From Octopus bimaculoides (Eukaryota), in NCBI RefSeq assembly GCF_001194135.2, contig NC_069000.1, positions 14,907,281-14,971,121 of the forward strand: a stretch of DNA of 63,841 nt, given 5' to 3'. Made by a program: the position numbers and the translations under genes. The notes below the pieces were generated by a model. That model was not told the origin of the DNA. It saw nothing but the letters and a program-made list of their open reading frames with translations, and did no database searches. Each line of letters starts with the position of its first letter. The stretch's first letter is position 1. Of the stretch, positions 14,641-49,752 are shown one piece after another.

Positions 14641-15220
14641 TTAGTTGAATGAATTGGTCCCAGTGTTTACTTAGTTTTTTCAAGCCTGGTTCTTATTCTG
14701 TCGGTCTCCTTTGCTGAACTGCTAAGTTACGGAGATGTGAACACACCAACACTGGTTGTCAAGCGGTGGTGGAGACAAACACCAGCACAAAGACACACAA
14801 ACATACACACACACACACACACACATACACACACGCACGGAGTTATAGCAGAAGACACTTGCCCAAGATGCCATGCAGTGGCACTGAACCTGGAACCATG
14901 TGGTTGGGAAGCAAACTTCTTACCATACCGCTACACCTCATTTTATGATTTTTTTTTTCTACAAATTATATTTCAGATTATGTTATATGCATTAATGGCT
15001 TCGTTGGAGCAAAAAAATTATTCTATGAAAGACAGTGCTCCAACAATATCAATAACAGTGACTTGCACCTTTCTTACCAGGTCTTCTCTTAGCTTCTATT
15101 CATTCAAATTGAAGACCACCAGAGAAATACAAAGAAACATATGTTCTGTACATTTAATAAAATTCGAGTTGCATAGTTAAAACCACAATAATGTGAAGCT
15201 CCATAAAAAAACATAACCAT

Positions 15221-15628
15221 AGGCACAGGAGTGGTTGTGTAGTTAGTAGCTTGCTTACCAACCACATGGTTCCGGGTTCAGTCCCACTGCGTGGCACCTT
15301 GGGCAAGTGTCTTCTACTCTAGCCTCGGGCCGACCAAAACCTTGTGAGTGGATTTGGTAGATGGAAACTGAAAGAAGCCCGTCGTATACATGTATGTATG
15401 TGTGTTTGTGTGTCTGTGTTTGTCCCCCAAACATCGCTTGACAACTGATGCTGGTGTGTTTACGTCCCCGTAATCTAGCAGTTCGGCAAAAAGGGACCGA
15501 TAGAATAAGTACTAGGCTTTCAAAGAATCAGTCCTGGGGTCGATTTGCTCGATTAGAGGCAGTGCTCTTGAACCCAGAACCATGTGGTTGGTAAACAAGC
15601 TACTTACCACACAGCCACTCCTGAGCCT
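15221..15628 (+). mobile_element. SINE family A ending in an inverted copy of its own head
   Basis: + copy at 15221-15567, followed directly by a reverse-complement head at 15568-15628. Confidence 0.85.
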
Positions 15629-18200: not shown

Positions 18201-19264
18201 GCCTATACAAAGTTGGTAATGGGCCCAGGTCAAATATAAAATGTCAGTTGCCCCACTGCCATTTCTATTGATAATAGACCCAGGTTGGATGTATCCTGTA
18301 AGCTCCCATTTCAAACTACTCAATATTTTAGTAATATTAATCTGGCCTCTATCCTTTGACCTGTCCAGTATGAAAGGCCATACAAGGAGCTTGCACTCAA
18401 CTGACAAAACTCTCAGGGTCATTGAGGCACACAAGCCATCGCACGGCAATAAAGACTGGACCTCATATCTGAATGGTCTTATTCTGTTACTCTTGCATAG
18501 TACTTCACAAGAAAATAAAACAGAGCTGGATTTCCTTAATGCTTTATTATGTATAATGCAAGGTTATAATAGGGTGGCTATGATTTCATCAATGATACGG
18601 ATGTGTGAAAAGGTGGTAAGCTGTCAAAATTGTTAACATGCTGAGCAAAATGCTTGGCAGCATTTTGTCTGTCTTCACGTTCTGATTCTGCTGAGGTTGA
18701 TTTTGCCTGTCATCCATCTTTGCATTCTGAGTTTAGATTCTGCTGAGATTGACTTTGCCTGTCATCTTTCAGGGTCAATAAAATAAGTACTAGCAGAACA
18801 CTGGGGTCAATGTATTTGACTTAACCCCCTTCTCTGAAAATGCTGACCTTGTGTGGAAATTTGAAATCAGTATTACGGATGTACGAAATATCAAACACAG
18901 ACTGTTTCCACCTCTTAACAGTGTTGAACTGAATCTCTGCATAGTACCTATTATAATAGGCACCATGGGGCGGTACTACTATTATAATTATAGCTAACTG
19001 GAATGGGATACCAGAAGTTGTGTCTTTGTCAGGGACTCAGGGCATTGTTAATACAAACCCATCAGTTTCTATTCCCCAAATCAGCTTCAGTTCTATATTT
19101 CTGCTTTAATTTCATCAACTTTTCTATGCTTTCATGGGTCAGATGAAATTTATTGAGGTATATTTTTTTAATGGCCAGAATGCCCTTCTAGTTGCCAACT
19201 CTCACCTGTTTCCAAGCAAAGTTAATGTTTCCCATGGCCAAACATCTTTTTTTTTTTAATACAG

Positions 19265-23703: not shown

Positions 23704-24313
23704 AAAACTATGACATTACTTGGTAAACTAATGTTTATTTCATAAAAATCTGTCCACTTCTCCCCATAAACCAGAGTCTTTTGATTTTTGTACAAGAGCA
23801 CTTGAAGTGTTTATACTAGGTCAGTTGGACTATTTAAAATACCACACTGACCACCATTCCTGTTATGCAACTATTGGCTATCCACATAACATTAACTTCT
23901 ATGCTTTAGTCCTTTTTATACATACATCTTATTCTCACTAAAAGCAAAAATAACTAAATAACTCAGAGCAGACATAGTTATCTGGTTAAGAAGTTTGGTT
24001 CGTGTCTTACATAGTTTTCCTTGTTTGATCTTTCTGCATAGTGTTTTGGGGCAAGTATTTTTCTACCTTAGCCTTAGACTAACTAAAACCTATCAAAAAA
24101 AATTTGATGGGCAGAAACTGTATTGAAACCTGTTGTGAGTGTATAATATACGTTTGTCTAACCCATACTAGCATAGAATTTTGGATGTAAAAATGAACAA
24201 CCCAATAAAAAGGAAATTAATTTGATTGCTATAGAATTGCTATAGAAAGTAATTTTTTTTTCTCTCAGCTGTGGTGTATAATTTAAATCTACCAAACCAA
24301 ACAACATGCAAAC

Positions 24314-24423
24314 CTGTTTGTAGTAGTCCTCTATCAGTTTAGTGTTTATTATATTAATCTCCTCCAATGTGGCTTGATTAATGGCCAAGCACCCCTTCCT
24401 CCTTCTTTTGTTTTCTTCTGTTC
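24314..24423 (-). CDS. Internal exon of the same unidentified gene
   Basis: Acceptor tttcttttcacaattaaag, donor CAG|gtttgc (weaker +3 base), 110 nt, phase 1 to 0. Reads (G)TEENKRRRKGCLAINQATLEEINIINTKLIEDYYKQ and lies inside the 132-aa ORF 24158-24556. Confidence 0.65.
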
Positions 24424-25284
24424 CTTTAATTGTGAAAAGAAACATATCTAGGTTATGAGATTCTAGAAAGGTCCCATTCACCTCCACCCACCAACATTCC
24501 TCACCGCCCCAAGATGTGGAGGAATGTTTTATCACTGTTGTCATCATCACCATCATGATCGTAATCCTAGCTCAGCGATGTGGTTAACAGGTTCATTTTT
24601 GCAATCACATGGTTCCAGTTTCAAATGCTGTGTATGTGTGTGTGGAGAAAGGCACATAAGGTGAACATTTTCCACCCTATAGGACTTTGGTTGGCCCCTG
24701 ATAGATGGAATTTGTGCAGATGCCCATTGTATGGAGTGTACCATTTCTTAGACAGTAGACTTCATCGTGGCCTATTGTTTAAGGTATTCTTCTCATGCCC
24801 CTAAGGTCATGAGTTCAATTTCCAGCAACGTGTTTTGTCCTTGAGCAAGACACTTTATTTCACACAGCTCCAGTTCACACAGCTGGTAGAAGTGAGAGAG
24901 TAGTACCTGTATTTCAAAGCATCAACCATGTCACATTCTGTGTCATGCTGACTCTTCCTGAGAACTATGTTAGGAGTATATATTTATCTGTGGAATACTC
25001 AGCCACTTGTACATTAATTTCATGAACAGGCTGTTTTGTTGATCAGATCAACTGGAACACTTGTAACCAATGGAGTGCCAGTTCGACTTTGTTTGGTACT
25101 GAGTTTAAAAAATCACCACCTGCCCTTAAATGCATTCTACAGAATCCACTCCGTTAGAAACATTTGACAAAGTTTCAGACCTGGGAGAGCATCTACATGG
25201 CTGCTCAACTTTGCTAGAAATAACAGCCAAATTTTCTTCCATATTGCACCCCACTGCCTTAAATAAGGAAAGGACACATTAGAT

Positions 25285-27048: not shown

Positions 27049-27235
27049 TCTATATGGAGAATATCTGTCTCTCATCTATAAAGTATATATCTATATATAC
27101 AAGTATTATATAATTATAAACATAATTATAGAATATTTGTATAATTTTACCTATAAAGGTTATTTTAACGTACCGATCTACTTGGTAAAATTATTGATTG
27201 ATTAATTAATTAATTTAATTGATTAATTTTACCCT

Positions 27236-27272
<37 letters not shown>

Positions 27273-28655
27273 CCCTATATAACAGCTGGATGCCCTTCCT
27301 AACACCAACCACTCTGAGAGAAATGGGTGCTTTTGCATACCACTGGTATGGGTGTCAGTTGCATGACACCAGTATTTGGGCTTGATGGGTTTTCTTCTCA
27401 AGCTCAGTATATTGCCAAAAGTCTTGGTCATTTGTTATTGCCTCTGTGAAGCCCAATGTGTGAAAGATGCTAGTTATGCGACACCAGCATTGCCTCTGTG
27501 AGGCCTGGTTTTCATCAGAAACCTGTGTAAGCTGTTTGTTGTTTGATAGATACCATCTTGTGTGGAAACAATGTAGGGGTTAGTGTCAGGAAGGGATTCT
27601 GGCTTTAAAACACTTTGCTCCCAATGTACTCTAATCTGATCCATGCAAACATAGAAAAGTAGATGTTAAAACAATGATTTTGATGATGAACATACTGTCT
27701 CTGTTTAACTGAAGACATAAAAGAACCAATCACCACCATATTATAATTATGTTAACAATTAATATTTATTATATTAATAATCATTAATATTTTATAATTA
27801 AATTCAAATGTTGGAATAATGGTTTTATGCGCAGTAACAACTTCTTTCTTAGGCCTAATTGCTTTCCACATGGAAGTACCAGTAGTATGCTGGACTTGAT
27901 TTAATCAAGTATACTCTTTGCCGACAACGATTGGCCTACTACCTAGTTAAAACAAAAGTATTCTGAGTTCTTGGTTCAAATATCACTAGAGTCAACTTTG
28001 TTTCCTCCACATAAGGTAAAAAAACCAGATATAATTAGGTGGTTATAATCAGCTATACACTCACTCCAAAATCTCTGGCTTTGAACCTATTTTAGTAATC
28101 AATAATCATTATTTATGGTTCATTAGTGAAGGTATATGGCCTTGTGGTTAATATCTTCATCTCATAATCTTAAGATTGTGGGTTCAAGTCCCAGACTAAG
28201 CATCAAGTTGGGTCTTTGTGCATGACACTTCATTTCACATCACTCCTGTTTGCTCAGCTGAAATGAGCACCAGCCGAGCGCTGGTGCAGGTCTTTCTTTC
28301 TACAGCTGTCACATCCTTGATCTTCCATTGGTTCAAGGATGAGAGGGTCAAGAGGGTCTCTATATCACGACTACAAAGGCACTTAAAAGGCACTTAAAAT
28401 AAGCAAAAGCAGGCACATGCTGCCAGTTCCTTTTCTCTTGCTATGGGTTTTCTTTGTGGTTTTGGTTCAGTAATCTCACTAAGTATTGTTACCATTAAAT
28501 TATTCAATACTGGTGGTAAGTTGGCAGACTTGTTACACTGCTGGGGAAAAATGCTTTGTGGTTTTTCTTCTGACTTGTTACAGTGAATTCAGATTCTGCC
28601 AAAGTTGACTTTTCCTTTCATTCTTTCAGCATCGATGAAATAAAGTACCATTTTA

Positions 28656-29451
28656 GTTAGCTCTTCCTTGATTTGATGGGTGGTGGTGGTGCATGGCTGT
28701 TCTCAGTTGGTGGAGCAACCTGTCTGGTTGTTTCTGATGACAAATGAGTCTCTGGATTGCTAACTAGTGCATAGATTAGTGTTTTTCTGTTGACATGGTT
28801 GTGCTGAAGCCATCAATGGTAGCTCCATGTGTAACCTGGGCTTGCTATTACCACAGCTCTCCTTTGAGTGTAGCATTGCAGCGATGTCCAGCTGCCCTCA
28901 CTGGTGATCATGGCATGGCTGCAACATCAGTTGTGGAGCAGTAGCAGTAATCCAGTTGACTCAGCCTGTGCAAACTTGGCAGTGGTACATCACATCCAGG
29001 TCAATCAGTTGACAAATGCAGCACTTCTCAGAGGGACAGGTGGAAGAAAACTGCACAAGGTGAAGCAGTAACAGGTTTGTGATGCCCTTTGATGTCCAGG
29101 GCCACATGCATGCTACATAGGAGGTATCAGTGGGTGCATTTCCCCTGACCCAAGAGACTCAGGAATCCTTTGAACCTGATAATCGATTTTTGGAATTTGG
29201 ACCTGGAATGAACCCTGTGAATGAGGAATTCCAAGTAGGTGTGGGTCATCAGCCCACATCGACCATGCCCCTGCCCTTTGTACACATCACCTGTTGCTAC
29301 TACCAATCACATGATCTGGAGAAGTCCTCAGATTTGGCCAATGTGTCTGCATTCAGGTGGCAGCATTCTGTGTTATCATCGGTGTGTTTGCTGATGGCTG
29401 AGAGATGACCAAACCCAATCGGTTATAGGAAGTAAAATTTGCAACAAGGTT
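28656..29451 (+). pseudogene. Degraded 18S rRNA 3' fragment (V6/V7 to near the 3' end)
   Basis: Decayed versions of universal SSU motifs in the correct order: ggtggtgcatggctgttctcagttggtggag, acttctcagagggaca, aacaggtttgtgatgccctttgatgtcc, gaggaattccaagtag, cctgccctttgtacaca, ggaagtaaaatttgcaacaaggtt. Many CpG>TpG/CpA changes and no flanking ITS or rDNA context. Confidence 0.93.
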
Positions 29452-29583
29452 GATGTTATTGACGAATAACAACCTTCTAAAGTTGCTGGCCTGTGCCAAA
29501 ATTTGAAGCCATTGTATTCGTCAACGAGTATTCCATTTCATTAACTTGGTTTCATTTCTTTGCTAGTATCATATACAAAAGAA

Positions 29584-29835
29584 CAGTGATGGTCAACCTT
29601 TTAAACTGGCATGTTGAAATGTTGGTTCTTTAATAATCCTGTTATTGTAGTGTCACTTGCATGTCTACATGTATTTCTCCAGCTAGGTAAATGCTTATGG
29701 ATAAACTTTTAGTAACATGATATTGTTGGAAGTTTTTTTTTTTTGCTTGTCTATCAGAGTCCATTACATGACAACCTAAAATACCCCAGTGGCATGTCAC
29801 TGCTGACATGCATGCCATAGGTTCTGCTATCACTG
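29584..29835. mobile_element. Older hAT-like MITE
   Basis: Imperfect TIRs cagtgatggtcaacct / aggttctgctatcactg. No TSD is recognisable. Confidence 0.6.
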
Positions 29836-29979
29836 CACTGCAATTCTGCTGCAGTCTGTAAAACAGTTTAAGAATAAAATGCAAGTATAAAGAATTTCCC
29901 ATCTAAATGTCTTGGCATTTTTTTTGTTTTTTTTTTGTTTCTGTATTTGGTTAAATTACATTTTCTTTCTTCCTTTCTT

Positions 29980-30375
29980 TCTTTTACTTGTTTCAGTCAT
30001 TTGACTGCGGCCATGCTGGAGCACCACCTTTAGTCGAGCAAATTGACCCCAGGACTCATTCTTTGGAAGCCTAGTACTTATTCTATCGGTCTCTTTTTGC
30101 CGAACCGCTAAGTTACGAGGACGTAAACACACCAGCATCGGTTGTCAAGCGATGATGGGGGGACAAACACAGACACACAAACACACATACATATATATAT
30201 ATACATATATACGACGGGCTTCTTTCAGTTTCTGTCTACCAAATCTACTCACAAGGCTTTGATCGGCCCGAGGCTATAGTAGAAGACACTTGCCCAAGGT
30301 GCCACGCAGTGGGACTGAACCCGGAACCATGTGGTTGGTAAGCAAGCTACTTACCACACACCCACTCCTGTGCCT
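29980..30375 (-). mobile_element. SINE family A, young copy
   Basis: High identity to 7158-7559, 55728-56125 and 36080-36683. Confidence 0.9.
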
Positions 30376-31367
30376 ACATTTCCAAAGAAAAAAAAGAAAA
30401 AAAGAAAAACATTTCAAACAAAGTTAATTACTTGCCACTGTTTTTCCAAATAAACGAATCAAAGAATTAATAGCACCTGCTGTAATAGAGATTAGACATA
30501 TTATTGTAATGCCTGGGTCAAAGACTGCACAGCTCTGTGTGTATATGTTTATGTGGGCATGCATGTATGTGTAGTCGAAGTGTTTGTGGGTATGTGTGTA
30601 TAGTAGGGTGTGTGAGTTTGTGTGTAGTAGGATGTGTTTAGTAGGGTGTGTATGTAAATGTGGTAGGTTGTATGTAAATGTGTCTGTAACAAGTGTTTTT
30701 GAAATTATTGCATTGGCAATTAAGTGAGGGTGATTAGACTAAACCGAGTGCTGTTTTTATTTTATTTATTTATTATGTATTTTTTTTAAATACTTTCAGC
30801 AGGAGGAGGGGTGGCAGCACCTGTGTAACCTTTTCTATGGCCATTGAGACTGGGAGGAAAAAAAAAGGATGTTGCTCTTATCCTGGGGATTTAACCCAGG
30901 GGAAACTTTACTAAAGACTTCTACACAGTTTCAATCTACCAAATACACTCATAAGGGATTGGTTGACCCAGGGCTATAGTCGAAGATACTTGCCCAAGGT
31001 GCCATGCAGTGGGACTGAACCCAAAACAATATGGTTGCGAAGTAAGCTTCTTAACGACATAGCCACTCCTGCATATATCTTTTGCCACTAGACATATACA
31101 TATATACATGTCATAGGCTTCCATACAGTTTCCATTGATTACATTTCACTCGAAAGGCATTGAGAACTTTAAGCTATGGTTGAAGACATTCACTCTCGAT
31201 TCCACACAGTGGGATTGAACCCAGAACCACAGCTAGGTGGCTGCAAATCAAAACTTCTTAACCATTCAGTTTTCTAACTAAACTCAGCTATAGCTTGTTG
31301 GCAACTGTATCTATTTATTTATTGATTGATAGAATCCTAATTACTTATAGATTATGATGTTACTTAC

Positions 31368-31444
31368 CTGGACAGACAAGGTATTTTATGCTGCTTGTTC
31401 TGTAGTCAAGCTGTATTTTAATGCCATGACCAACCAGATCATAT
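31368..31444 (-). CDS. Internal exon of the same unidentified gene
   Basis: Acceptor atgactttccag, consensus donor CAG|gtaagt, 77 nt, phase 2 to 1. Reads YDLVGHGIKIQLDYRTSSIKYLVCP(G). Phases match the flanking exon candidates on both sides. Confidence 0.7.
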
Positions 31445-32172
31445 CTGGAAAGTCATATCATTAGTTGCCACCTAATGAGATTCTTGCTTGTGAGCAATCC
31501 TACACCTCTTGTGACACCTCACACTTTCTCTCTCTGTCCCTCTCCCTCTCTATATCTCTTTCTCTGCTCTCTTTCTGATTCTCCATCTCTCTGCTCCTCC
31601 TGTACCTCTTTTTACTTCTGTATCTTTTCCACTTTCTCTTTCTGTCTATCATTCTATCTCGTTTCCTCTCTGTCTGTCTGTCTCTCTCTCTCTCCTATTC
31701 TGTCTGTCTGTCTTCCTCCTTTGCACTCTCTTCCTCCCTTCTCTCCTTCTTCCATTTGTTTCTTTCCTTTGTTCCTCTCTCATTCACCTGTTCTTCCTCC
31801 ATTTCTCTCCATTTCTCCTCTTTCTTTTTCCCTCCCTCCTCTCTCTTATGTTTCTCTCGGTCTTCATCTCTTTTGTTTCTTTCTTTCTCCTATTTCATAC
31901 TCACATACTCTGTTATTGTAGTTTATATTCACATCAGAAATATGCAATCAGTGTGACTCAGTATTGCAGATACACATCATATATATCATCATCATCATCA
32001 TCATCATCAAATGTCCATTGTCCATGCTGACATGGGTTGGATGGTTTGAGCAGGCTGGCATGCCAAAAGGCTGCACCACACTCCAGTTTGATTCAGCATG
32101 GTTTTCTATGACTGGATGCCCTTCCTCATGTCAACCACCCTGAGAGTATAATGGGTGCTTTTACTTGCCATC

Positions 32173-32209
<37 letters not shown>

Positions 32210-32470
32210 TGTTCCCAGTCACATTGTTTGAGATTCAGTCCCACTGCAAGGCACCTTGTATATATCTATACAATTGAATCGTGCTCTTCATCTTTATTAT
32301 TATTATTATTATTATTATTATTTATAAGGTGGAGTTCAAATTCTGCCAAGGTTGACTTTGCCTTTCATCCTTTCAGGGTCAATAAAATAAGTACCAGTTG
32401 AACACTGAGGTCAATGTAATCGACTGATCCCATCCCGCCAAATTGTTGCCCTTGTGGCAAAATATGAAAC

Positions 32471-32501
<31 letters not shown>

Positions 32502-32528
32502 GTTATTATTATTGTTGTTAGATTGATA

Positions 32529-32565
<37 letters not shown>

Positions 32566-32759
32566 GTTTATATTTAACAGTCTTCTTTGCAGCTAGCTAT
32601 GACTGATTCTGTGTTCGATGAGAAACAGGTCATCTATTTAGATATGGTTGCCAGGTAATTTGGAATTCAAGAAATATTTCTCGAATGATGACAAAAGTTA
32701 ATGGTTATAAAATGCATTGCTAACATAAATAAATACCAGGCTGGAATTCAAATTACATA

Positions 32760-33097
32760 TGTATGCAAACACACATACTCACACACTCTATACAACCACC
32801 CCCACGCGCATACTATACATAACCGCTCTCATACATCATATGCACCACACACATTCGCTTACACAGATACATAGCTGTGATACATATTCATTAACAAACA
32901 TGCATACCACATTCACACACACACACGCACATGTTCACTACATACAGTCATTCACATCATATACACTTCGCATATATTCCCTCTCATAGATATCACATAT
33001 ACACAGTCACTAACAAACATGGATACCACACACACACCCACACACATAATACATACACACATACACACAGTATACTACATTTAGTCATTAGCATATA

Positions 33098-33147
<50 letters not shown>

Positions 33148-34110
33148 CCCACATATATATCTACATGTGCTCATGTATATAGGTGTACACACACATGCAC
33201 TTAAATTCTCTCATATACATGCACATTAACTCACATTTACACATGTATTTACACATTTGTCCCCCCTCATGCTCACATACATGTACATGCTGGGGACACA
33301 CAAACACACATGCACACACATGCACATGTACACACCTGTACATAATTTTTTTCACTGACGCCTCACACTCACTCCCATTTACACATGTCCCCTCTCACAT
33401 TACATTCTCATACTCACACCCACTCACATTCATAAATACACACTCACACTCGTTCATATTTACACCCACTCACACTGACATACCTGTTCACATAGACACA
33501 CACTAGCTCACATGCACACAAAACACACACACACACACATGCACGCCTACACACACACACACATACACACTTGCTCACACACAGGCACACCTGCTCACAT
33601 ACACATCTGCTCATACATTCACATATACACACACCTGCTCTCACACACAAACACACACCTGTTCACAGATTCACATATACACACACCTTCTCACGCACAC
33701 ACACACACATACACACACACATACACACACATCTACTCACACATTCTCATATACACACACCTGCTCACACACACACACACACTTGTTCACACATTCACAT
33801 ATATATGCACCTTATCACTCACACACACACACACATACACACAGACATCTGCTCACAATTTCACATATACACACACCTGCTCTCTTTCACACACACTCAC
33901 ACATACACACACACATGCTCTCTCAAACACACTCGCACATTCACATATACACGCACACACCTGTTCACCTTAATACACATGTATATCTATACACATACCA
34001 ACATTATGTGTAGGAATGCATAACTAACAAGTCTGCTGTCACACTCTTAAATCTACACACAAACACACTCACGCATGCACACACATGTTTATACATACAC
34101 ATACACATAC
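32760..34110. repeat. Long compound CA-rich microsatellite field
   Basis: (CA)n with recurring cacctgctcaca variants. Source of the H/T-rich pseudo-ORFs. Confidence 0.95.
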
Positions 34111-35062
34111 ACATCCATGCTCTCTCTCTCTCTCTCTCTCTCTCTCCCAATCACCCCTCTCTCTTCCCCCTCTCTCTTCCCCCTCTCTCTTCCCCCTCTC
34201 TCTTCCCCCTCTCTCTTCCCCCTCTCTCTTCCCCCTCTCTCCTCCCCCTCCTCCCCCTCTCTCTAAATCATAAACATATTTGTGGGTATATTTGCATATC
34301 TACCCACACATCCACCCTCAATATATTCTAGTTACATGTACTTGTGCAAACGAGGCTGCCGGCTACACTCTGTAGCCGGCATTTCAACCTTTAATCCTTT
34401 CAGTATATGCCCCCCCCTCCTCTCGCTGCAGTAATTAAACACTCCCCCCAACATCTGCTTAATATCTTTATTTACCCCCTCCCACCTTCTCTCACTTTCC
34501 TCCTTCATTAATAAACGAACTATTGTTGTTGTTGTTGCTGTTGCTGTTCTCTAATTCCCCCCCCTTGTCACTCAACCTAAGCCTTCTCCTCAGTCAATCT
34601 TTCTTTCTTTCTTTCCTTCTTTCCTTCCTTCTTTTTTTTCTTTCTTTCTTTCTTTCTTCTACAAGTGCTATCATCACTACCACCGCCACCACCACCACAA
34701 AACGACTACCACCACTACCATGACAACAGTAACACTACCAACTACTACTACTACCACCAACACAACAACAGTGACTGTTACTACTGCCACCATTACCATT
34801 CTGTGGCTGGATGCTCTTCCTGATGCCAACCACTTTATAATGTGCTACTAGGTGCTCTTCTTGTGCCACTAGCATTAGTAAGGTCGGCGTGCATCTTAAA
34901 CAATGTAGTTGTTGGTATTACATTTTTTCCATGGCTTATAATTGTTTCAATATCACATAATTGTCAAATCATATAACATGTCTGTGGTTGATATTAAGAA
35001 GAGGACCCAGCCATAAAAACCATGCCAGAACCGACAGTGGAGCTTGGTTCAGTCCTCTAGCT

Positions 35063-35359
35063 CAGGGGTTTTCAAACTTTTTGACTTGCGGACCCCTTTA
35101 TATTTCAGGCTTTACCTTAGGGCCCCCTTATAAACGCTTACAAAATTTATACATAAATATTTGCTTAAAATAACATATATTTTTACATTTATTTATTTAA
35201 CAGTATTTAACAAATAGGTTTATTGTCAATTAAAAGATTTCGATTAAAAAAACATATATAAAATCAAATTGCCCATAAAAAGTATTTGCTGTCCACAGAC
35301 CCCCTGTCTTGTCCTTGCGGACCCCCTGTGGTCTGTGGACCACAGTTTGAAAACCCCTG
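35063..35359. mobile_element. hAT (Charlie-like) MITE inserted in an RTE 3'UTR
   Basis: Perfect 16-bp TIR caggggttttcaaact, TSD ctctagct / ctctagtt (7 of 8). Confidence 0.88.
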
Positions 35360-35670
35360 CTCTAGTTTACCAGCTCCTGCCAAGCCATCCAACCCATGCC
35401 AGCCTGGAAAATGAACATTTCATGATGATGATAATGGTGGTGGTGGCGGCAGTAGTGTTTGTTGTTGCTGAAGACATGTCTTCAACATCTCCATTCTTCT
35501 CTTGTTATTTATATTCTGCAACTGAGGATAATCTTCTTGATTTTTTACTTTGCGTAAAACTACCAGTTTCTGCTGGACAAATTCTCATCTTACACATTCT
35601 GATAACTGGTGTTCACAGGAGTTATTGCCTGAAGTTAACTGCCTGGATTTCCAAATCAAATGCTAAAAGG

Positions 35671-35965
35671 TTCTATATTTAAGAGATGAGGAATTATTTA
35701 CATTTGACGGATATTTGTCCTCATCTTGTTTGTTGTCAACACAACGTTTCGGCTGATATACCCTCCAGCCTTCGTCAGGTGTCTTGGTGAAATTTTGAAC
35801 CTGGGTTCTCATTCCTAACGATGTTACTATTATTATATTATTATTATTATTATTATTATTACTATTATTAATCAGGTCGCTGCCGTGAAAAGGCTGGAGG
35901 GTATATCAGCCGAAACGTTGTGTTAACAACAAACAAGATGAGGACAAATATCCGTCAAATGTAAA
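35671..35965. mobile_element. Penelope-like non-autonomous element with 76-bp inverted arms and a 15-bp target-site duplication
   Basis: Arms 35697-35772 and 35890-35965 differ at one base and carry the PLE-type end motif (cctga)cgaaggc..ccgaaacg. Flanked by aaatgctaaaaggtt (35658-35672) and aaatgctaaagggtt (35963-35977). Confidence 0.7.
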
Positions 35966-36826
35966 TGCTAAAGGGTTTAGGCATTTTCTCCAACCCATTG
36001 AGCTCCTGTTTTGAACTGCATTCTCCAGTTAACCCCTTCAACGTTCAGATTACTCTGTCAAATGTAATGCTTATTCTTTTACTCTTTTACTTGTTTCAGT
36101 CAATTGACTGCAGCCATGCTGGAGCATCCGCTTTAGTCGAGCAAATCGACCCCCAGGACTTATTCTTTGTAAGCCTAGTACTTATTCTATCGGTCTCTTT
36201 TGCCGAACCGCTAAGTTACGGGGACGTAAACACACCAGCATTNNNNNNNNNNNNNNNNNNNNNNNNNNNNNNNNNNNNNNNNNNNNNNNNNNNNNNNNNN
36301 NNNNNNNNNNNNNNNNNNNNNNNNNNNNNNNNNNNNNNNNNNNNNNNNNNNNNNNNNNNNNNNNNNNNNNNNNNNNNNNNNNNNNNNNNNNNNNNNNNNN
36401 NNNNNNNNNNNNNNNNNNNNNNNNNNNNNNNNNNNNNNNNNNNNNNNNNNNNNNNNNNNNNNNNNNNNNNNNNNNNNNNNNNNNNNNNNNNNNNNNNNNN
36501 NNNNNNNNNNNNNNNNNNNNNNNNNNNNNNNNNNNNNNNNNNNNNNNNNNNNNNNNNNNNNNNNNNNNNNNNNNNNNNNNNNNNNNNNNNNNNNNNNNNN
36601 NNNCCAAGGTGCCATGCAGTTGGACTGAACCCAGAACCATGTGGTTGGTAAGCAAGTTACTTACCACACAGCCACACCTGCGCCACCTGCTTGTTTATTC
36701 CTGTTGTTTTAAATTAAGTATGCATTATTTGATTGTTTTGTAGGGTAGGTGTGAGAGCCTGGATCTGGCCAGTTTGAACATAAAACAGATAGTTTGGTCA
36801 GATGTGGCTGGCTTAAATGTTAAAAG

Positions 36827-38694: not shown

Positions 38695-38975
38695 TTGTCT
38701 ATCTACTTACCCACCCACCCTCTTTCTCTCTTTCTCTGCTTTTGTTCTTGTTACTGGTTACTGTCATAAGCCTATGGCTACGCCAGGGAGTCACCCTAAT
38801 CCCCTTTTTGAATATAGTTGGTTTCTTGTCTTTTTATCTTTTACATGTTTCAGTCATTAGACTATGACCATGCTGGGGCACCACCTTGAAAAATTTTAGT
38901 TGAATGAATCAATCCCAGGACTTGCTTTTTTTCTTAAGCCTTGTACTTACTCTGTCAATACCAATTGTCAATCAG

Positions 38976-40031
38976 ATGGACACATAAGAGGTGCAGCAAC
39001 ATCAAAGGCAGGTTAACTAGCAAGTTAGTTTTTGTTTGTGGCAGATGTTCAGGTGCAATAAAGACTGCAAACAAACAGGAAACAACTTCTATCTCATTCC
39101 AGGGTGAAAAACTAGAGGTAGTCGATAGCTTCCGCTATCTGGGCGACCAAGTTAGTAGTGGGGGTGGGTGCGCTGAAAGTGTAGCTGCTAGAATAAGAAT
39201 AGCCTGGGCAAAGTTTAGAGAGCTCTTACCCCTGCTGGCGACAAAGGGACTCTCACTCAGNNNNNNNNNNNNNNNNNNNNNNNNNNNNNNNNNNNNNNNN
39301 NNNNNNNNNNNNNNNNNNNNNNNNNNNNNNNNNNNNNNNNNNNNNNNNNNNNNNNNNNNNNNNNNNNNNNNNNNNNNNNNNNNNNNNNNNNNNNNNNNNN
39401 NNNNNNNNNNNNNNNNNNNNNNNNNNNNNNNNNNNNNNNNNNNNNNNNNNNNNNNNNNNNNNNNNNNNNNNNNNNNNNNNNNNNNNNNNNNNNNNNNNNN
39501 NNNNNNNNNNNNNNNNNNNNNNNNNNNNNNNNNNNNNNNNNNNNNNNNNNNNNNNNNNNNNNNNNNNNNNNNNNNNNNNNNNNNNNNNNNNNNNNNNNNN
39601 NNNNNNNNNNNNNNNNNNNNNNNNNNNNNNNNNNNNNNNNNNNNNNNNNNNNNNNNNNNNNNNNNNNNNNNNNNNNNNNNNNNNNNNNNNNNNNNNNNNN
39701 NNNNNNNNNNNNNNNNNNNNNNNNNNNNNNNNNNNNNNNNNNNNNNNNNNNNNNNNNNNNNNNNNNNNNNNNNNNNNNNNNNNNNNNNNNNGGCACATAA
39801 AAGACACCATTTCGAGCGTGGCCGTTTTCGTGCGGGTGACACGTAAAAGCACCCACTACACTCTCTGAGTGGTTGGCGTTAGGAAGGGCATCCAGCTGTA
39901 GAAACTCTGCCAAATCAGACTGGAGCCTGGTGTTGCCATCCGGTTTCACCAGTCCTCAGTCAAATCGTCCAACCCATGCTAGCATGGAAAGCGGACGTTA
40001 AACGATGATGATGATGATGATGATGATGATG
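38976..40031 (+). mobile_element. Young 5'-truncated RTE-clade LINE spanning a gap, inserted in a family-A SINE
   Basis: Uninterrupted frame HKRCSNIKGRLTSKLVFVCGRC..KLEVVDSFRYLGDQVSSGGGCAESVAARIRIAWAKFRELLPLL, typical of the RTE ORF at the end of the RT domain. 3'UTR ends ggacgttaaac(gat)n. SINE halves lie at ~38843-38970 and ~40032-40160. Confidence 0.9.
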
Positions 40032-42724
40032 TGGGACAAACACATACACACACACACAGCAGACTTCTTTCAGTTTCTGTCTACCGCATCTACTCACAAG
40101 GCTTTGGTTGCTTGAGGCTATAGGAGAAGGCACTTACCCAAGGTGCCACACTGTAGGACTGACCGATGCCTGACCCAAGTATTTATTTTTATTTTGGAAA
40201 AAGGTAAAGCAAAGTGGATCTGCGTGGGATTTGAAATCAGAATATAGAATGCTGTCACCAAATACCAAGTGTTTTTGATGATAGCTTTTGGTTGATCAAA
40301 GCCTTGTGAGTGGATTTGGTAGACAGACCCTGTAAGTACCCTGTCGTATTTGTAGATGTCTGTGTGTATCCTTGCCTTGATGTCATGGTTGTTTTTGAGC
40401 ATTGTTGTCATATAAATGATGTTATTATTTCAAGTCTTCTGTGGAAAAACATGGCCAGACAGGATCAACATGACGTAGCATGTGATAAAGCTGTGTTTTT
40501 GAATTACTGGTACAATCTATCTGACAGGCTTGTGTACAGTTTTCTTCTACCCAATCACTGTCACGAGGTGTGGGTTGAGTTGAGGTTAAAGAACATCACA
40601 TTTGGTCAAGGTACCACTGCAGGCTTATGGGTACTGGTGCCATGTAAAAGCACTGTGCTGGTTCCACATTAAAAGTGCCCGTGCTGGTGCCACATAAAAA
40701 TCATCCCGTACACTCTGTAAAGTAGTTGGCATTAGGAAGAACATCCAGTCATGGAAACCATGCCAAAACAAACAAAATGAAACCCAGGCAGCTCTCTAGC
40801 TGGCCAGTTCCTGTCAAACTGTCCAACCCATGCTAGCATAAAAAAAAACAAATATTAAATGATGATCGTGATGATAATAACCATTGCATGGCATCAGACC
40901 CAGGACCTTGTGACTGCAAAGCAAACTCCTTAACCATTCTGACATCTCCCTTCTTCTCCACACACATACACACATACTCTTTAAAGTACACATTTTTTTT
41001 GTAGAAAAAAAAAAGAGAATTTATGTCCAAAGCTGAGTTTGTCTTCAGAGATGCCTGCATTACTGTCAGGTAATAAATAAATATAAATACTTAAATCACA
41101 TTTAATTTGAGGTGCTTTAACAATCTGCTAAAAGGGTTCACAGCTTAATGAATCATGTAATATGATATATTGCAGACTTCTTGGAGCAAGATTACCATGC
41201 TGGTTTTTTTCTATCTTTCTCTTTTATTTTCTACCTTTACAGTTTTGTCTTTCTTCTTTGCTTATTTGTCCATTTTTCTTTCCTTTCTTTACATATATTT
41301 TTCTTTTTTTTATCTCTTTCCTTTCTAGTTTTCTATTTTTTATTTTCTTTTTCTTTCTTTCATTCATTTTTTTTTGTTTTTCTTTCATCGTTCATTTTTT
41401 TTTTATTCTTCTTTTCTATACTCCTTTTTTCCCCCCTTTTTCATTATTTTTCTTGTTTATCACCTATGGAAAAGTTTCTTACCTTTGTGTTATTCCTGTC
41501 ATCTAATTGCTTCTCTTTTTTTTTCACTTTATCTTCTGCTTGACTTTTTCTCTTCTTCTTCATCGGTTCCACAAATTTAATTAGATATCATACAAGATCT
41601 GCATTTGAATTAAATGATTGTATTTCAAGTTCAATAATTTGAGGACAAGATTAGTTTTCAAAGAGGAGAAAAAAAAAAGAATTACTATTGTTAGGTTTTT
41701 AGCCCCAGGTCAACCATAATCGAGCAAACTTTTAATGAAAGTCACTGAAGCCATAACCATGCATCCAGAATTACATTATTCAACATCTTTCTGTCTATAT
41801 TATATGTTTGATTTGAGGGAGATTTGGTTGCTATTTCTTGTATGCTGAGCGACCACATTGTCTAATATCTTTCCATTTGTTTAAAGACTATGGTATAGTT
41901 TGAAGGAGATTTGGGTGTTATTTCTAGTATATTGAGTGTTCAGTCCAGCCTAGTCCAATACAAAGAGAAACAGAGAAGGGAAAGAGAAAGAAGATCCCAA
42001 TATTGGACTGGTAAATTTATCAGCTCCTAGTCACCACACCAAAAACAAAAGCAAAAAAAAAAAACCCAAAAGGGAAAAAAAACTGCCCTCAGTGGGATTT
42101 GAACTCACAGTGTAGAGAGAGGAATTGAATACTGCATGATGTTTTATCCCCTGATTTATGGTGAAAGGCATAGTTTATCTCATCCAATAAGAACTTCACT
42201 TTGTAATTTTCATTTGTTTTTGCTAAAGTCTAAAGACAGTAAGGTGTGATTTGAGAAAGATTTGGCTGCTATCTTTAGCAGGTTGAGCGACTGTTGAGAA
42301 GCATTGTCTTTAGATGTTACATAAAAATGATTGAGTGGTCATGTAGAAGCTGCTTATTTATTACTGCGTAGAGAAAATAAATTTAACTCTTGTTGATGGA
42401 AGGACTATGAAGATAAATCTTATCTGCAGTGGAACTGATGATGGCATAATAATCTCATCCACCATTTAAATTATTTGAAAATATTACGGTTTATTATTAT
42501 CTTCATCATTATTATTATCATTGTTGTTGTTGGCAGAATTGTTGGTGTGTTTGACAAAATACTTAGTGGTATTTCATGTGGACCTTTATGTTCAGTCTTC
42601 AAATCCTGTCAAGGTTGACTTAGACTTCCTCCCTCCCAGAGACAATAAAATAAGTATTAGTTGAGCACTTGAGTTCATGTAATTGACTGGCCCCCTCCCC
42701 CAAAATTTCAGGCTTTGTGCCTAT

Positions 42725-42734
42725 AGTAGAAAGG

Positions 42735-42791
<57 letters not shown>

Positions 42792-43045
42792 GAAGGTGAC
42801 AAGCTGGCAAAATTGTTAGTACACCAAGCAAAATACTTAGCGGCATTTCGCCTGCCGCTACATTCTGAGTTCAAATTCTTCAACAAAACAAGAGTTAAAA
42901 AGAGCAACAATAATAATAATAATAATAATAATGATAATAATAGTAATAGTAATAGTAATAATAATAGTAATAGTAATAATAATAGTAATAGTAATAGTAA
43001 TAATAATAATAGTAATAGTAATAATAATAATAATAATAATAATGC
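42725..43045. repeat. (ATT)n and (AAT/AGT)n tracts between SINE B copies
   Basis: Direct inspection. Confidence 0.95.
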
Positions 43046-43838
43046 TTATTTTAGGCACAAGGCCAGCAGTTTTGAGGGTGAAGAAGTTGATTACATTGGC
43101 CCTAGTCTTCATCCAGTACTTATTTTCTTGACCCTGAAAGGCTGTAAAGTAAAGTTGTTCTTGGTGGTGTTTGAACTCAGGACATAAAGACATGCGAAAT
43201 GCTGCTAAGCATTTTGTTGTGTGTGCTAAGGATTCTACCAGCTCGTTTATTATTTCAGGAATCTTTTATGTGTTTTTCTTTACACAGTTGAATTCAATTC
43301 TGTGTGTCTTGGTTATGTGCAGTGGTGCCTTGGATATGTGTGGTACCGTCTTGCATTGTATATGGGTAGTATTGTTGTGGGTAGGGTAGAGATGCCCTAC
43401 TTTGGTATGGTGCTAAAACAATTTTGGGTAGATAATATCTTGGAAGATAGAGAGAGAGAGAAAGAAAGAGAGAGAGAGAGAAGAATTATGGTATTACTTT
43501 TGCAATTCCAAACCAATCTGGAAACTATTTCATAAGTTAAGAAACGCTGACTTTGTTTATGAATAGTTTAGGTTTTTGGAATGGTATCATATTTGATAGA
43601 GAATTTCACTTGCGGTTGGCAATTGGTGAAACCAATTCTTGAAGATTTCCATTTATAAAAAGCGTGTTTGTGTGTATTTATACAGGCTCACACATATGTA
43701 TGTCGATGCAAAATACACACACACACATGCACACACATTTATCTGTAATTTGTTTTTTTATGTTTGCATGTATGCATTACATATGAGTTCGTTCTCAGTA
43801 TTTATGTATGAGGACCACATATATCAATGTATGTATTT

Positions 43839-44412: not shown

Positions 44413-46039
44413 TAACAAGGCCATAATTAAAGTAGTTATTTGCTATATACTTGTAAAATATAATAATTACTGTTATTATCAAATAACTGTTAGCACATGT
44501 AGGACAAATCCAGTCGTTGACTTAGTTTCTTGTGAAGGTAGCTCCAGGCAGTTTTTTTCCTCGGATGGCTGTCAAAATAGGTTATATAATAGCTGCACTT
44601 AAAAGAGTAGTATCGTGTTGTATAGTATGGCACCCCCATCTGTGGAAGTCACCTCTTCTGTCTGTAGACTGGGGTATTTCATCCGTGTTTATGTTTTGAG
44701 TTCAAGTCCCGCTGAGGTCGACTTTCATTGTCGTTAAAATAAGTAACGGTTGAGCACAGGGGTCAATGTTATCACCTTACTCCCCTCTTCTGAAATTTCT
44801 GGTCTTGTGCCAAAATTTTAAAACATTGTTATTATTGGCTATTGAAAAGTTTCAGTTCCTATTGAAGCAACAGTAAGTTTGGACAAAACATCTAATATTG
44901 ATCATAGCTACTATTTGGCATCTCCTTGTGTAGGAGTAAACTGCAAGATTTGTATATACCTGCTGTACCACACCCATCATTCATTTAGCTGGCTGAGTTA
45001 TTTTGCCATTTGTCTCTTTCTTAACTGAAAAGCGGAAAGAAAAGAAGACGAACAAAGAGAATGTGGGTTGTGTCAGTCACATATAAAGAGTACTGCTTTC
45101 TTTTCTGATGTTTGTTCTCTTGACTCCCATAAACATATGTGTGTTTTTTTTCCTTTTTTATTGTGTATATATCTGTCTTACTCTGTCACTGTAAATTTCT
45201 TGCCCTCATTCTTGATCACTCTCTCTCTCTCTCTCTCTCTCCCCTTCATTTGCCCTTCCCTCTGGCTAGCTAACCAAGTCTCTTTTACAGCAGCACATCT
45301 TTTCTGTCCACTTTCTTGTTACCCCTCCCCCTCATCTCTCTTTCTCAGCCAGGTAACCATGTACTTCCTCTATAGCAAGACACCCGTTTCTACCTCTCTG
45401 TCTCTTTGTCACATCCTAATCTTTCATCATCTGACACAAAATCACTTCCTCCAATGCCCCCTCTCCTTTCAAAATTCCTTATCTTGCAAGTTACTTGGTA
45501 ACCCTGCCAATGCTGGTGCCATGTAAAAAGCATGCAGTCTACATTGTGAAGTGGCTGGCATTTGGAAGGACATCCAGCTGTAAAAACCATGCCAAAACTG
45601 ACCTCACCTGTGCTGGTGCCACATAAAAAGCACTGTGTCCACTCTACAGGGTGGTTGGTGTTAGGAAGGACAGCTAGCCATAAAAATTGTGCCAAAACAG
45701 ACACAGTAGCCTAGTGTAGTCTCCTACCGAGCCAGCTCCTGTCAAATCGTTCAACCCATATCAGCCTGGAAGGTGGACGTTAAATGATGATGATGATGAT
45801 ATGTATATATGGCACTCTGTCAGTTAGAATGATGAGAGTTCTATTTGATCTGATCAGTGAAACAGCCTAATTAATGTGCAAGTGCTTTTTGACCATCGGT
45901 GGTTGAATGGTGGCAAGAATTAAGAATTTCTGGGTATTTAATGAATAGATAATAACTCCCCACCCCCACCAGAAAGAATGAAAGTGAAAATTAAAAGCCA
46001 TTAGCTTAGGTAATCTTTTTTTTTAAGGAAAAATAGACA

Positions 46040-48605: not shown

Positions 48606-49329
48606 ATTACACAGTATCATGAACTTGACCTTGTGGTGGAACCTAGTACTGGAGGGATTGATTTTACTCTCTGTCACTTTATTTCTCTCTGGGTTGTACC
48701 TGTAATTCCAAGTTTCAACCTTGTTACATTGTGTTACATTGATTCAGTCTGAAAACTGTGTTAAGAGTACAAGTGTCTGGGAAACCAGCTCAAGTGCTGA
48801 CAGGTTAATTCCATGAATAGGAATTCAGTTGGTTGTACAACTGAAAGCTTATCATTAAACTTTTCGCATTCAGATCACTCTGTCAAATGTAATGCGTATT
48901 CATTCACATTGTTTTGGATTTATCATGTATTAACACATTGCTGTGAGGTTTTGATGATGGGATCGTTTATTTTTAGAATGTCACTGTAGGTTAGGTGTGA
49001 GAGGCTAGATCTGGCCAGTTTGGATATAAAACTGGTAGAATATTTGAGTCATATGTACTCAGTTTAAATGCTAAAGAGTTGAGATCAACAGAAAATCCCT
49101 CACCTTCACTCATTCCATGTTTATTCACAAAAATCTTTGTATAGATATGAAGTGATTTGAAGAAGATGTGCTTGTAGTAGAAAGGATTATTGACTTTGCC
49201 TTTCATCCTTTCGGGGTTGATTAAATAAGTACCGGTTAATCACTGGAGTCGATGTAATCGACTTAATCCCCTTGTCTGTCCTTGTTTGTCCCCTCTCTGT
49301 TTAGCCCCCTGTGGGTAATAAAGAAATAA

Positions 49330-49362
<33 letters not shown>

Positions 49363-49583
49363 GTTGTTGTTAAGGTGGAGAGCTGGCAAAATTATTGGCA
49401 CACAAGACAAAATGCTTGGCAGCGTTTTGCTTGTTTTTACGTACTGAGTTCAAATTCTGACTTTGCTTTTCATCCATTCAGGGTCAATGAAATAAATATC
49501 AGTCAAGTACTAAGGTCAGTGCAATCAAGTACACTGCTCCTCCAAAATATCAGGCCTTGTGCCTGTATTATGAATGATGGTTT

Positions 49584-49752
49584 GAGTGGTTGGCGTTAGG
49601 AAGGGCATCCAGCTGTAAAAACTCTGCCAAATTTAGATTGGAGCCTGGTGTTGCCATCCGGTTTCACCAGTCCTCAGTCAAGTCGTCCAACCCATGCTAG
49701 CATGGAAAGCGGACGTTAAACGATGATGATAATAATGATGATGATGATGATG
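49584..49752 (+). mobile_element. RTE LINE 3' end with (GAT)n tail
   Basis: Near-identical to the 3'UTR at 39868-40031. Confidence 0.85.

What the first reader, a model, noticed from the sequence alone, without database searches (positions are those of the whole stretch)
28511..29513. An ~800-bp 18S rRNA fragment sits inside a SINE (SINE-18S-SINE chimera)
Seen: a family-B SINE 5' half ends at ..taaagtacca (28650). The 18S fragment follows (28656-29451), then the SINE resumes with ..ttgatgttattgac..gttgctggcctgtgccaaaatttgaagcc. Compared with intact copies in this window (e.g. ~50015-50100), about a dozen SINE bases are lost. The right junction shares a ggtt microhomology, and there is no TSD or poly(A). 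Known: 5S- and 28S-derived SINEs exist. Inference: either one-off capture of rRNA/rDNA during break repair or template switching, or, if repeated, an undescribed 18S-carrying SINE. It is antisense to the putative host pre-mRNA, so intron RNA would be complementary to 18S.
Basis: partly seen in the sequence, partly recalled or inferred. Interest (0 to 1): 0.7.

Follow-up and report, generated by a model that had tools for sequence, protein, structure and literature searches.

The report
Decayed 18S fragment inside a SINE
A roughly 795-base, heavily mutated piece of 18S ribosomal RNA sequence sits inside one old copy of a short interspersed repeat, most likely as a one-off patch of a chromosome break; scattered rRNA pseudogenes of this kind are already known, so it is a clean but ordinary example.

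Summary
On the + strand, about 28656-29451 matches the 3' third of eukaryotic 18S rRNA (Rfam RF01960, 170.7 bits, E 5.5e-49). The last ~30 nt of 18S are missing. The fragment splits one copy of a SINE that has about 24 copies in the window. A SINE profile matches 28521-28650 (positions 2-129) and 29445-29507 (positions 139-202), so 6-12 SINE bases are lost. There is no target-site duplication and no A-tail. GGTT is shared at the right junction. The left junction lies in a patch where the SINE and 18S resemble each other.

The insert is an old pseudogene. CpG observed/expected is 0.11, about 13 of 14 conserved CpGs have decayed, and up to 14% of other conserved positions differ.

The best reading is a single capture of 18S sequence during microhomology-mediated repair of a break in an existing SINE copy. 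The template was rRNA or rDNA; I lean towards RNA. A double template switch is less likely, and a mobile 18S-carrying SINE is unlikely. Genome-wide copy number could not be tested, because no collection on hand holds this genome. Host-gene orientation could not be checked. Interest is low.

The parts
28511..28650 (+). 5' part of one SINE copy (head plus central domain up to ...AAATAAAGTACCA)
   Evidence: nhmmer profile positions 2-129 at 28521-28650, E 6.7e-20. The alignment with window copies shows the element starting near 28511. It differs from the window consensus at 23.7% of positions.
28651..28661 (+). Left junction zone (TTTTAGTTAGC), which cannot be assigned. The SINE (CAGTTGAGC) and 18S (GAUUGAGAGC) resemble each other here.
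   Evidence: Composite ancestors with breakpoints anywhere across this stretch all give the same edit distance. The sequence was read.
28662..29447 (+). 18S rRNA-derived pseudogene fragment, Rfam model about 1256-1796 (3' major and 3' minor domains), sense orientation, same strand as the SINE
   Evidence: RF01960 170.7 bits, E 5.5e-49 and 146.7 bits. CpG o/e 0.11 and TG+CA o/e 1.70. 41 of 231 conserved positions differ.
28787..28993 (+). About 207 nt extra relative to the Rfam model, in the terminal loop of the V7 hairpin. Probably the species' own expansion segment.
   Evidence: The insertion falls inside the hairpin loop of the model. GC and CpG-decay signature match the rest of the fragment: 48.4% GC, CpG o/e 0.08. 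It has no other copy in the window.
29341..29394 (+). Tip of helix 44, 54 nt where the model has 20
   Evidence: cmscan alignment
29448..29451 (+). GGTT microhomology shared by 18S (AAGGUU) and the SINE (GGGGTYGATG): the right junction
   Evidence: The SINE profile match already starts at 29445.
29452..29513 (+). 3' part of the same SINE copy (GATGTTATTGAC...GTTGCTGGCCTGTGCCAAAATTTGAAGCC)
   Evidence: nhmmer profile positions 139-202 at 29445-29507, E 7.9e-4. BLAST matches to the tails of copies at 50066-50102 and 44787-44829. Alignment.

Best explanation
This is a single, ancient insertion of a ~795-bp piece of 18S ribosomal sequence into a SINE copy that was already in the genome. It was made while a double-strand break in that SINE was repaired, and it has no function now.

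Proposed steps (inferred): the break fell in the ...GTTGAGCACTGGGGTYGATG... stretch of the SINE. One broken 3' end (bottom strand ...AACC-3') paired with GGUU about 30 nt from the 3' end of 18S and was extended for about 790 nt along the 18S template. The new strand then paired with the other broken end through the TTGAG/AGC-like patch that the SINE and 18S share. A few SINE bases (6-12) were lost.

The template was either mature 18S rRNA, copied by a LINE reverse transcriptase or a repair polymerase, or a piece of rDNA. I lean towards RNA, roughly 60:40.

Shown rather than inferred: the insert then sat in methylated, unconstrained DNA and lost nearly all its CpGs.
For: 1. The two SINE pieces are colinear halves of one element with only profile positions 130-138 missing. 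A break in one copy explains this automatically.
2. There is no TSD and no A-tail, there is a small target deletion, and the inserted RNA sequence lacks its 3' end. This is the published signature of endonuclease-independent, break-associated insertions (PMC1920257).
3. The right junction has a 4-nt microhomology, with chance about 1% per junction. The left junction lies in a patch where both partners are similar.
4. The 18S segment is single-copy among about 24 SINE copies, and it is the only rRNA hit in the window.
5. The insert is somewhat less diverged than its SINE flanks: 28/203 non-CpG conserved positions against 44/186, Fisher p = 0.013. This fits insertion into an older copy.
6. It is a true pseudogene rather than rDNA reads joined in by error: CpG o/e 0.11 against 0.27 for the window, and 13 CpG-decay changes at the ~14 conserved CpG dinucleotides.
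7. For an RNA template: the piece lies wholly within mature 18S. By my own mapping onto human numbering (about 1297-1839), it also lies between the two modifications that block reverse transcriptase, m1acp3-pseudouridine 1248 and m6,2A 1850/1851 (PMC4872110, PMC4472018). About 4% of random placements within 18S would do so. This is a post-hoc observation.
Against: No empty site (the same SINE without the insert in a relative) could be examined. Genome-wide copy number is untested. The age difference between SINE and insert rests on rough references: a window-only SINE consensus that mixes subfamilies, and a pan-eukaryote 18S consensus. With CpG sites included the difference is not significant (p = 0.12). 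The same SINE family often forms partial head-to-tail arrays in this window, so template jumping by its reverse transcriptase is plausible. The left microhomology is inferred through later substitutions and is not directly visible. RNA and DNA templates cannot be told apart from this sequence.
Confidence: 0.7

Rival explanations
1. Double template switch during retrotransposition of the SINE. The LINE reverse transcriptase copied the SINE RNA tail up to ...GATG, jumped to 18S rRNA at AAGGUU, copied about 790 nt, then jumped back onto a SINE RNA at ...GTACCA(GTTGAG). The whole SINE-18S-SINE cDNA was then inserted in one event.
For: All three parts are in the same sense orientation, and both junctions have microhomology or similarity. 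Chimeric retrocopies made by one or two template jumps are documented (PMC2104539), and 28S rRNA/LINE-1 chimeras are mostly sense-oriented (bioRxiv 10.1101/2025.02.02.635956). This SINE family shows fused partial copies in the window, for example 49770-49910|49912-50098, 18620-18715|18716-18867 and 11196-11557. SINE and insert are both old, and with CpG sites included their divergence does not differ significantly.
Against: The second jump would have had to land within 6-12 nt of the point of departure on the SINE template. Nothing in this model predicts that, whereas a break in one DNA copy does. Known chimeras carry the extra RNA at the 5' end of the primary template, not sandwiched inside it. 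At non-CpG sites the flanks are more diverged than the insert (p = 0.013).
Confidence: 0.15
2. The composite is one member of an undescribed family of mobile SINEs that carry an 18S module, analogous to the 28S-derived SINE28 or the 5S-derived SINE3.
For: rRNA-derived SINE modules exist (PMC4994717, PMC10946416). The SINE head with its promoter region and the SINE tail are both present around the insert.
Against: There is one copy among about 24 SINE copies in 64 kb, and no second 18S-like segment. The composite is about 1 kb long with five T4-T5 runs on the sense strand, including one right at the left junction. These would stop RNA polymerase III, although some may be later mutations. The SINE is damaged by a small deletion at the insertion point, as in a repair event. 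The SINE flanks are among the most diverged copies in the window.
Confidence: 0.04
3. Assembly artefact: rDNA-derived reads were wrongly joined to SINE reads in a short-read draft.
For: The window is a gapped draft with 11 runs of N, and both partners are repeats.
Against: The locus lies in an N-free block of 9.2 kb. The 18S piece is not the functional sequence: it is a copy with CpG o/e 0.11 that differs at about 18% of conserved positions, so it cannot come from reads of the rDNA array. The two SINE pieces fit each other to within 9 profile positions.
Confidence: 0.02

Closest known systems
Dispersed rRNA/rDNA pseudogene fragments (annotated as SSU-rRNA/LSU-rRNA repeats by repeat maskers; human survey in PMC5381670)
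   Same: A decayed piece of rRNA-coding sequence outside any rDNA array, not under selection, and embedded among transposable elements.
   Different: The human survey stresses degraded near-full rDNA units that include spacers, near array edges and elsewhere. Here the piece is only 795 bp, lies entirely within mature 18S, and has base-resolved junctions inside a SINE.
Endonuclease-independent (break-repair) insertions of LINE-1 and Alu (PMC1920257)
   Same: No target-site duplication, no poly(A), loss of a few target bases, truncation of the inserted sequence at its 3' end, and microhomology at the junctions.
   Different: The inserted sequence is 18S rRNA rather than a retrotransposon. Involvement of a LINE reverse transcriptase is inferred, not shown, and a DNA fragment would give the same picture.
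Chimeric retrocopies formed by reverse-transcriptase template switching (tripartite example PMC2104539; 28S rRNA/LINE-1 chimeras in bioRxiv 10.1101/2025.02.02.635956)
   Same: An abundant non-coding RNA is fused in sense orientation to a retroelement sequence, with short homologies at the joints.
   Different: Those chimeras put the extra RNA at the 5' end, and the whole chimera is flanked by TSDs. Here the rRNA piece replaces 6-12 nt in the middle of the SINE, and the SINE continues on the other side.
rRNA-derived SINEs (SINE28 from 28S, PMC4994717; SINE3 and other 5S-headed SINEs)
   Same: rRNA sequence physically joined to SINE sequence.
   Different: Those are multi-copy families in which the rRNA part is a functional module of the element. 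Here there is one copy, of non-SINE size, with no sign of amplification.

Membership tests
Eukaryotic SSU rRNA (Rfam RF01960), as sequence homologue | Score above the curated gathering threshold (50 bits) | tested here: met
   75.1 bits in the whole-window gathering run; 170.7 bits in the local run.
Functional 18S rRNA gene | Full length (model 1-1831), conserved core intact, part of an rDNA unit with 5.8S and 28S | tested here: not met
   Only model positions ~1256-1800 are present. 41 of 231 conserved positions are changed, with many non-canonical pairs marked in the alignment. There is no other rRNA match in the window.
Dispersed rRNA pseudogene fragment | rRNA homology outside an rDNA array, with neutral decay | tested here: met
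   CpG o/e 0.11 with TG+CA o/e 1.70. 13 CpG-decay changes at the ~14 conserved CpG dinucleotides. Flanked by SINE and unique sequence.
Classical target-primed retrocopy (LINE-mediated processed pseudogene) | Target-site duplication flanking the insert | tested here: not met
   The flanks are consecutive parts of the SINE with 6-12 nt lost, not duplicated.
Classical target-primed retrocopy (LINE-mediated processed pseudogene) | 3' poly(A) or the LINE-recognised tail at the 3' end of the insert | tested here: not met
   The insert ends at AACAAGGTT, about 30 nt before the 18S 3' end, with no A-run.
Break-repair (endonuclease-independent type) insertion | No TSD, small target deletion, 3'-truncated insert, junction microhomology | tested here: met
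   GGTT is shared at the right junction. The left junction lies in a SINE/18S look-alike patch.
Break-repair (endonuclease-independent type) insertion | Pre-existing uninterrupted target (empty site) in a relative or other haplotype | not testable with these tools
   No collection on hand holds this or related eukaryotic genomes. Protein-based look-ups found nothing.
Template-switch chimeric retrocopy | Parts in the same orientation, fused directly | tested here: met
   The SINE halves and the 18S piece are all on the + strand and directly abutting.
Template-switch chimeric retrocopy | TSD flanking the whole chimera, with the accessory RNA at the 5' end of the primary template | tested here: inconclusive
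   The outer flanks show only a weak candidate repeat (CCATTAAATTA upstream, CCATTTCATTA downstream, read), and it would equally be the SINE's own TSD. The accessory RNA sits inside the SINE, not at its 5' end.
rRNA-derived SINE family (SINE28/SINE3-like) | Many dispersed copies sharing the same rRNA-SINE junctions | tested here: inconclusive
   Single copy within the window. The junction 21-mer gave only chance matches in the metagenome collection, which is not expected to hold this genome. The genome itself was not searchable.
rRNA-derived SINE family (SINE28/SINE3-like) | Transcribable by RNA polymerase III as one unit (no internal T-run terminators, SINE-like length) | tested here: not met
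   About 1003 bp with five T4-T5 runs on the sense strand, at 28562, 28610, 28651, 28782 and 29187. Caveat: some of these may be later mutations.

The most novel reading that the evidence does not exclude
The SINE-18S-SINE composite is, or once was, a mobile element, which would make it the first SINE family with an 18S-derived body. This copy would then be one decayed member of it. A milder novel reading is that the patch was reverse-transcribed from mature 18S rRNA primed by a broken DNA end, and that its extent was set by the two reverse-transcriptase-blocking modifications of 18S. I put that second reading at about 0.4, but it would be of modest interest.
Probability: 0.04. Interest if true: 0.6.

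Novelty: new member of a known kind. Interest (0 to 1): 0.2.

Why it matters
As it stands it matters little. It is one more rRNA pseudogene fragment, and one more case of a break patched with an abundant cellular sequence. Its value is as a clean, base-resolved example. The SINE serves as a built-in ruler that shows exactly what was lost at the target (6-12 nt). Both joints fall in short homologies. The insert spans only the part of 18S that a reverse transcriptase can copy between two blocking modifications. If a genome-wide survey showed that rRNA-derived inserts in this genome are generally confined to such intervals, that would be simple evidence for RNA-templated break repair in the germ line. 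For annotation, the segment should be masked as an rRNA pseudogene and not called an rRNA gene.

Tried and rejected
1. To find other copies, orthologues or the species' own 18S, I searched the protein collection with the 92-aa ORF that runs through the 18S part (29130-29408). No candidate was found. Exact look-ups of that ORF and of a 132-aa ORF at 24158-24556 found no encoding contig. So no eukaryotic DNA outside the window could be reached.

2. A scan of the metagenome collection with the right-junction 21-mer (AACAAGGTTGATGTWATYGAC) gave 5 loci. All match only 21-33 nt and nothing on either side, so they are chance matches. This is uninformative for copy number, because the collection is not expected to hold this genome.

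3. Folding the V7 region gave a z-score of +0.88, so no structure signal is left. I used composition and CpG decay instead to argue that the extra 207 nt is native to the fragment.

4. ARAGORN found no tRNA-like head in any SINE copy. The whole-window Rfam scan at a loose threshold found only microsatellite noise besides the 18S hit.

5. I looked for host exons by inspecting ORF lists on both strands. I recognised only LINE-derived ORF fragments and no exon, so the 'antisense to host pre-mRNA' claim stays untested. I did not run profile searches on these ORFs.

6. I tried to pin down the left breakpoint by edit distance. Many breakpoints across 28650-28660 tie, so it is reported as ambiguous.

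7. Rejected: two unrelated SINE fragments flanking the insert by chance. The profile coordinates 129|139 on the same strand argue against this. Also rejected: a later insertion of foreign DNA into V7. The composition and decay are the same as in the core, the extra sequence lies in the hairpin loop, and it has no repeat copies.

Full report
**What is there**

Reading 28200-29900 and scanning the window against Rfam gives a single family above its curated threshold. This is eukaryotic small-subunit rRNA on the + strand.

- Run on the local region, the match reaches 170.7 bits, E 5.5e-49. The 3' part alone gives 146.7 bits.
- Convincing homology begins at UCUUCCUUGAUU (28662-28673, model about 1256).
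- It ends at AACAAGGUU (29443-29451, model about 1792-1800).
- The aligner's continuation to 29472 skips nine model positions at low posterior probability. That stretch is really SINE sequence, so the last ~30 nt of 18S are absent.
- Relative to the model there are about 207 extra bases in the terminal loop of the V7 hairpin (28787-28993).
- There are also 54 bases instead of 20 at the tip of helix 44 (29341-29394).
- These extras have the same GC content (about 48%) and the same CpG-decay signature as the core.
- They lie where expansion segments normally sit (the V7 hairpin loop and the helix 44 tip), and the whole 18S segment has no other copy in the window.
- I therefore take them to be the species' own expansion segments. 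I recall that cephalopod 18S genes carry such expansions, but I could not confirm this from the papers on hand.

**The flanks**

The left flank matches more than a dozen places in the window, and the right flank matches the tails of two copies. An alignment with intact copies shows a head, a central domain (...GACTTTGCCTTTCATCCTTTC.GGGTCGATAAAATAAGTACCAGTTGAGCACTGGGGTCGATGTAATCGAC...) and a tail (...AAATTGCTGGCCTTGTGCCAAAATTTGAAACC followed by ATT repeats).

A profile built from nine copies finds 24 matches in the window. Two of them are 28521-28650 (profile positions 2-129, E 6.7e-20) and 29445-29507 (positions 139-202, E 7.9e-4). The two flanks are therefore colinear halves of one copy, on the same strand as the 18S piece, with only positions 130-138 missing.

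The central domain reminds me of the CORE domain of MIR-like SINEs, to which the octopus OR1 element is assigned (PMC4824008). That is a recollection, not a test. Likewise, the overall look of the window suggests an octopus-type genome, but I did not establish the organism.

**The junctions**

On the right, GGTT (29448-29451) is both the end of 18S AAGGUU and the start of the SINE's GGGGTYGATG.

On the left, GTACCA (28645-28650) is SINE and AGCTCTTCCTTGATT is 18S. The eleven bases between them (TTTTAGTTAGC) can be derived from either partner. The SINE reads CAGTTGAGC here. 18S reads GAUUGAGAGC, where Rfam prints UUgA, four unprinted positions, then uCUuUC, and the middle four are filled in from my knowledge of animal 18S. 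Composite ancestors with any breakpoint across this patch fit equally well.

The SINE therefore lost between 6 and 12 bases. No duplication flanks the insert, and there is no A-run. A 4-nt microhomology is expected at about 1% of random joints.

**State of the insert**

- CpG observed/expected is 0.11, against 0.27 for the window. TpG plus CpA are in strong excess at 1.70.
- At positions that the Rfam consensus prints as highly conserved, 41 of 231 differ.
- Thirteen of those are C-to-T or G-to-A changes at the ~14 conserved CpG dinucleotides.
- 28 of 203 non-CpG positions differ, which is 13.8%. This is an upper bound, since the reference is a pan-eukaryote consensus.
- The V7 region no longer folds better than shuffled sequence.

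This is an old, methylated, unconstrained pseudogene. With a Jukes-Cantor distance of about 0.15 and any plausible animal neutral rate, its age is in the tens of millions of years. That is a rough inference.

The decay also disposes of misassembly. Reads from the functional rDNA array could not produce this sequence, and the locus sits in an N-free block, 27049-36242.

**Relative age**

The SINE flanks differ from the window consensus at 44 of 186 non-CpG positions (23.7%). That places this copy among the most diverged in the window, where the range is 11-24%. Against the insert's 28/203, Fisher's p is 0.013. With CpG sites included, p is 0.12. Both references are crude, so this is only a tilt towards 'the SINE was there first'.

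**Mechanism**

The pattern is the one described for endonuclease-independent, break-associated insertions of LINE-1 (PMC1920257): no TSD, no tail, a few target bases lost, an insert truncated at its 3' end, and short homologies at the joints.

The strongest argument for a break in a pre-existing DNA copy is geometric. The SINE resumes 6-12 bases from where it stopped. That is automatic if both ends come from one break.

The alternative is a double template switch of the SINE's reverse transcriptase (SINE RNA to 18S rRNA and back). In that case the return point could be anywhere, so the near-perfect restoration of the SINE would be a coincidence. The alternative is not excluded:

- Double jumps are documented (PMC2104539).
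- 28S rRNA/LINE-1 chimeras are mostly sense-oriented (bioRxiv 10.1101/2025.02.02.635956).
- This SINE family shows several fused partial copies in the window.

I give break repair 0.70 and the double switch 0.15.

**Template**

RNA or DNA cannot be decided from this sequence. In favour of RNA, the piece lies wholly within mature 18S. By my own mapping to human numbering (about 1297-1839), it falls between m1acp3-pseudouridine 1248 and m6,2A 1850/1851. These are the two conserved 18S modifications shown to stop reverse transcriptase in primer extension (PMC4872110, PMC4472018). Only about 4% of random placements of such a piece within 18S would fit that interval. This was noticed after the fact, and it depends on positions I mapped from memory of the conserved sequence. 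The break-primed model is as follows: the ...AACC-3' end of the right-hand DNA pairs with GGUU of the rRNA, is extended for about 790 nt, and the new strand joins the left end through the TTGAG/AGC patch. It fits the data but is inferred.

**A mobile 18S-carrying SINE?**

Nothing supports this.

- The 18S part is single-copy among about 24 SINE copies, and it is the only rRNA hit even at a loose threshold.
- The composite is about 1 kb long and has five T4-T5 runs on the sense strand.
- The host SINE is damaged at the insertion point.

The genome-wide test could not be run. The collections on hand hold no eukaryotic genomes, protein-based routes failed, and a junction scan of metagenomes gave only chance 21-mers. 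I put this reading at 0.04.

**Comparison with what is known**

Dispersed rDNA-derived pseudogenes are well documented in human (PMC5381670). rRNA pieces inside transposable elements are reviewed in PMC10946416. rRNA-derived SINEs exist for 28S (PMC4994717) and 5S. This locus works like a break-repair insertion and is a member of the broad class of rRNA pseudogene fragments. It fails the defining tests of a classical retrocopy (TSD, tail). It fails, or cannot be shown to pass, those of an rRNA-derived SINE family.

**Host-gene claim**

I recognised no exon on either strand in ORF lists, only LINE-derived fragments. So I cannot say whether the insert is intronic or antisense to a transcript. 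With about 18% of conserved positions changed, any pairing with 18S would be imperfect. There is no evidence for a function.

**Verdict**

This is a new example of a known kind, and interest is low (0.2).

Noticed in passing
window 49190-50098; 18620-18867; 11196-11557; 53421-53933; 42530-43242: Copies of the same SINE family often lie in head-to-tail arrays of partial units. For example, a 3'-truncated copy is fused directly to a 5'-truncated one at 49910|49912 (...gtgccaa|tgggacaag...), and profile positions 1-103 are followed by 52-204 at 18715|18716. This suggests frequent template jumps or unequal exchange in this family.
   Followed up: partly
window 58038-58270(-), 1487-1708(-), 49190-49331(+) versus 32297-32470, 49912-50098, 44671-44823: The SINE family has two different 3' tails on the same head and core. 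One ends ...CCTTGTTTGTCCCCTCTATGTTTAGCCCCTTGTGGGCAATAAAG. The other ends ...AAATTGCTGGCCTTGTGCCAAAATTTGAAACC followed by (ATT)n. This may mean two partner LINEs.
   Followed up: no
window 7157-7567, 55713-56123, 30157-30396, 15219-15567, 1748-1986, 5167-5405, 36616-36706: A second, younger-looking and abundant repeat of about 410 nt, with 86-91% identity between copies. It ends ...GCAGTGGGACTGAACCCGGAACCATGTGGTTGGTAAGCAAGCTACTTACCACACAGCCAC..., in both orientations. One copy lies only about 460 bp downstream of the composite element.
   Followed up: no
window 12978-13409(-), 13206-13457(+), 38941-39260(+): ORF fragments that look like C-terminal parts of LINE ORF2 (...LRW... and C..C......GLISH motifs). 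Two overlap on opposite strands, and one is cut by an assembly gap. I recognised them by eye only.
   Followed up: no
window 28124-28260: A GC-richer stretch just upstream of the SINE has weak similarity (about 69%) to 9044-9160(-) and 24768-24885(+). It is probably another old repeat.
   Followed up: no
whole window: The window is a draft assembly with 11 runs of N (10-929 nt) and very dense TA/TG/TC microsatellites. These microsatellites produce dozens of sub-threshold 'mir-297/mir-466'-type Rfam matches that should be ignored.
   Followed up: yes
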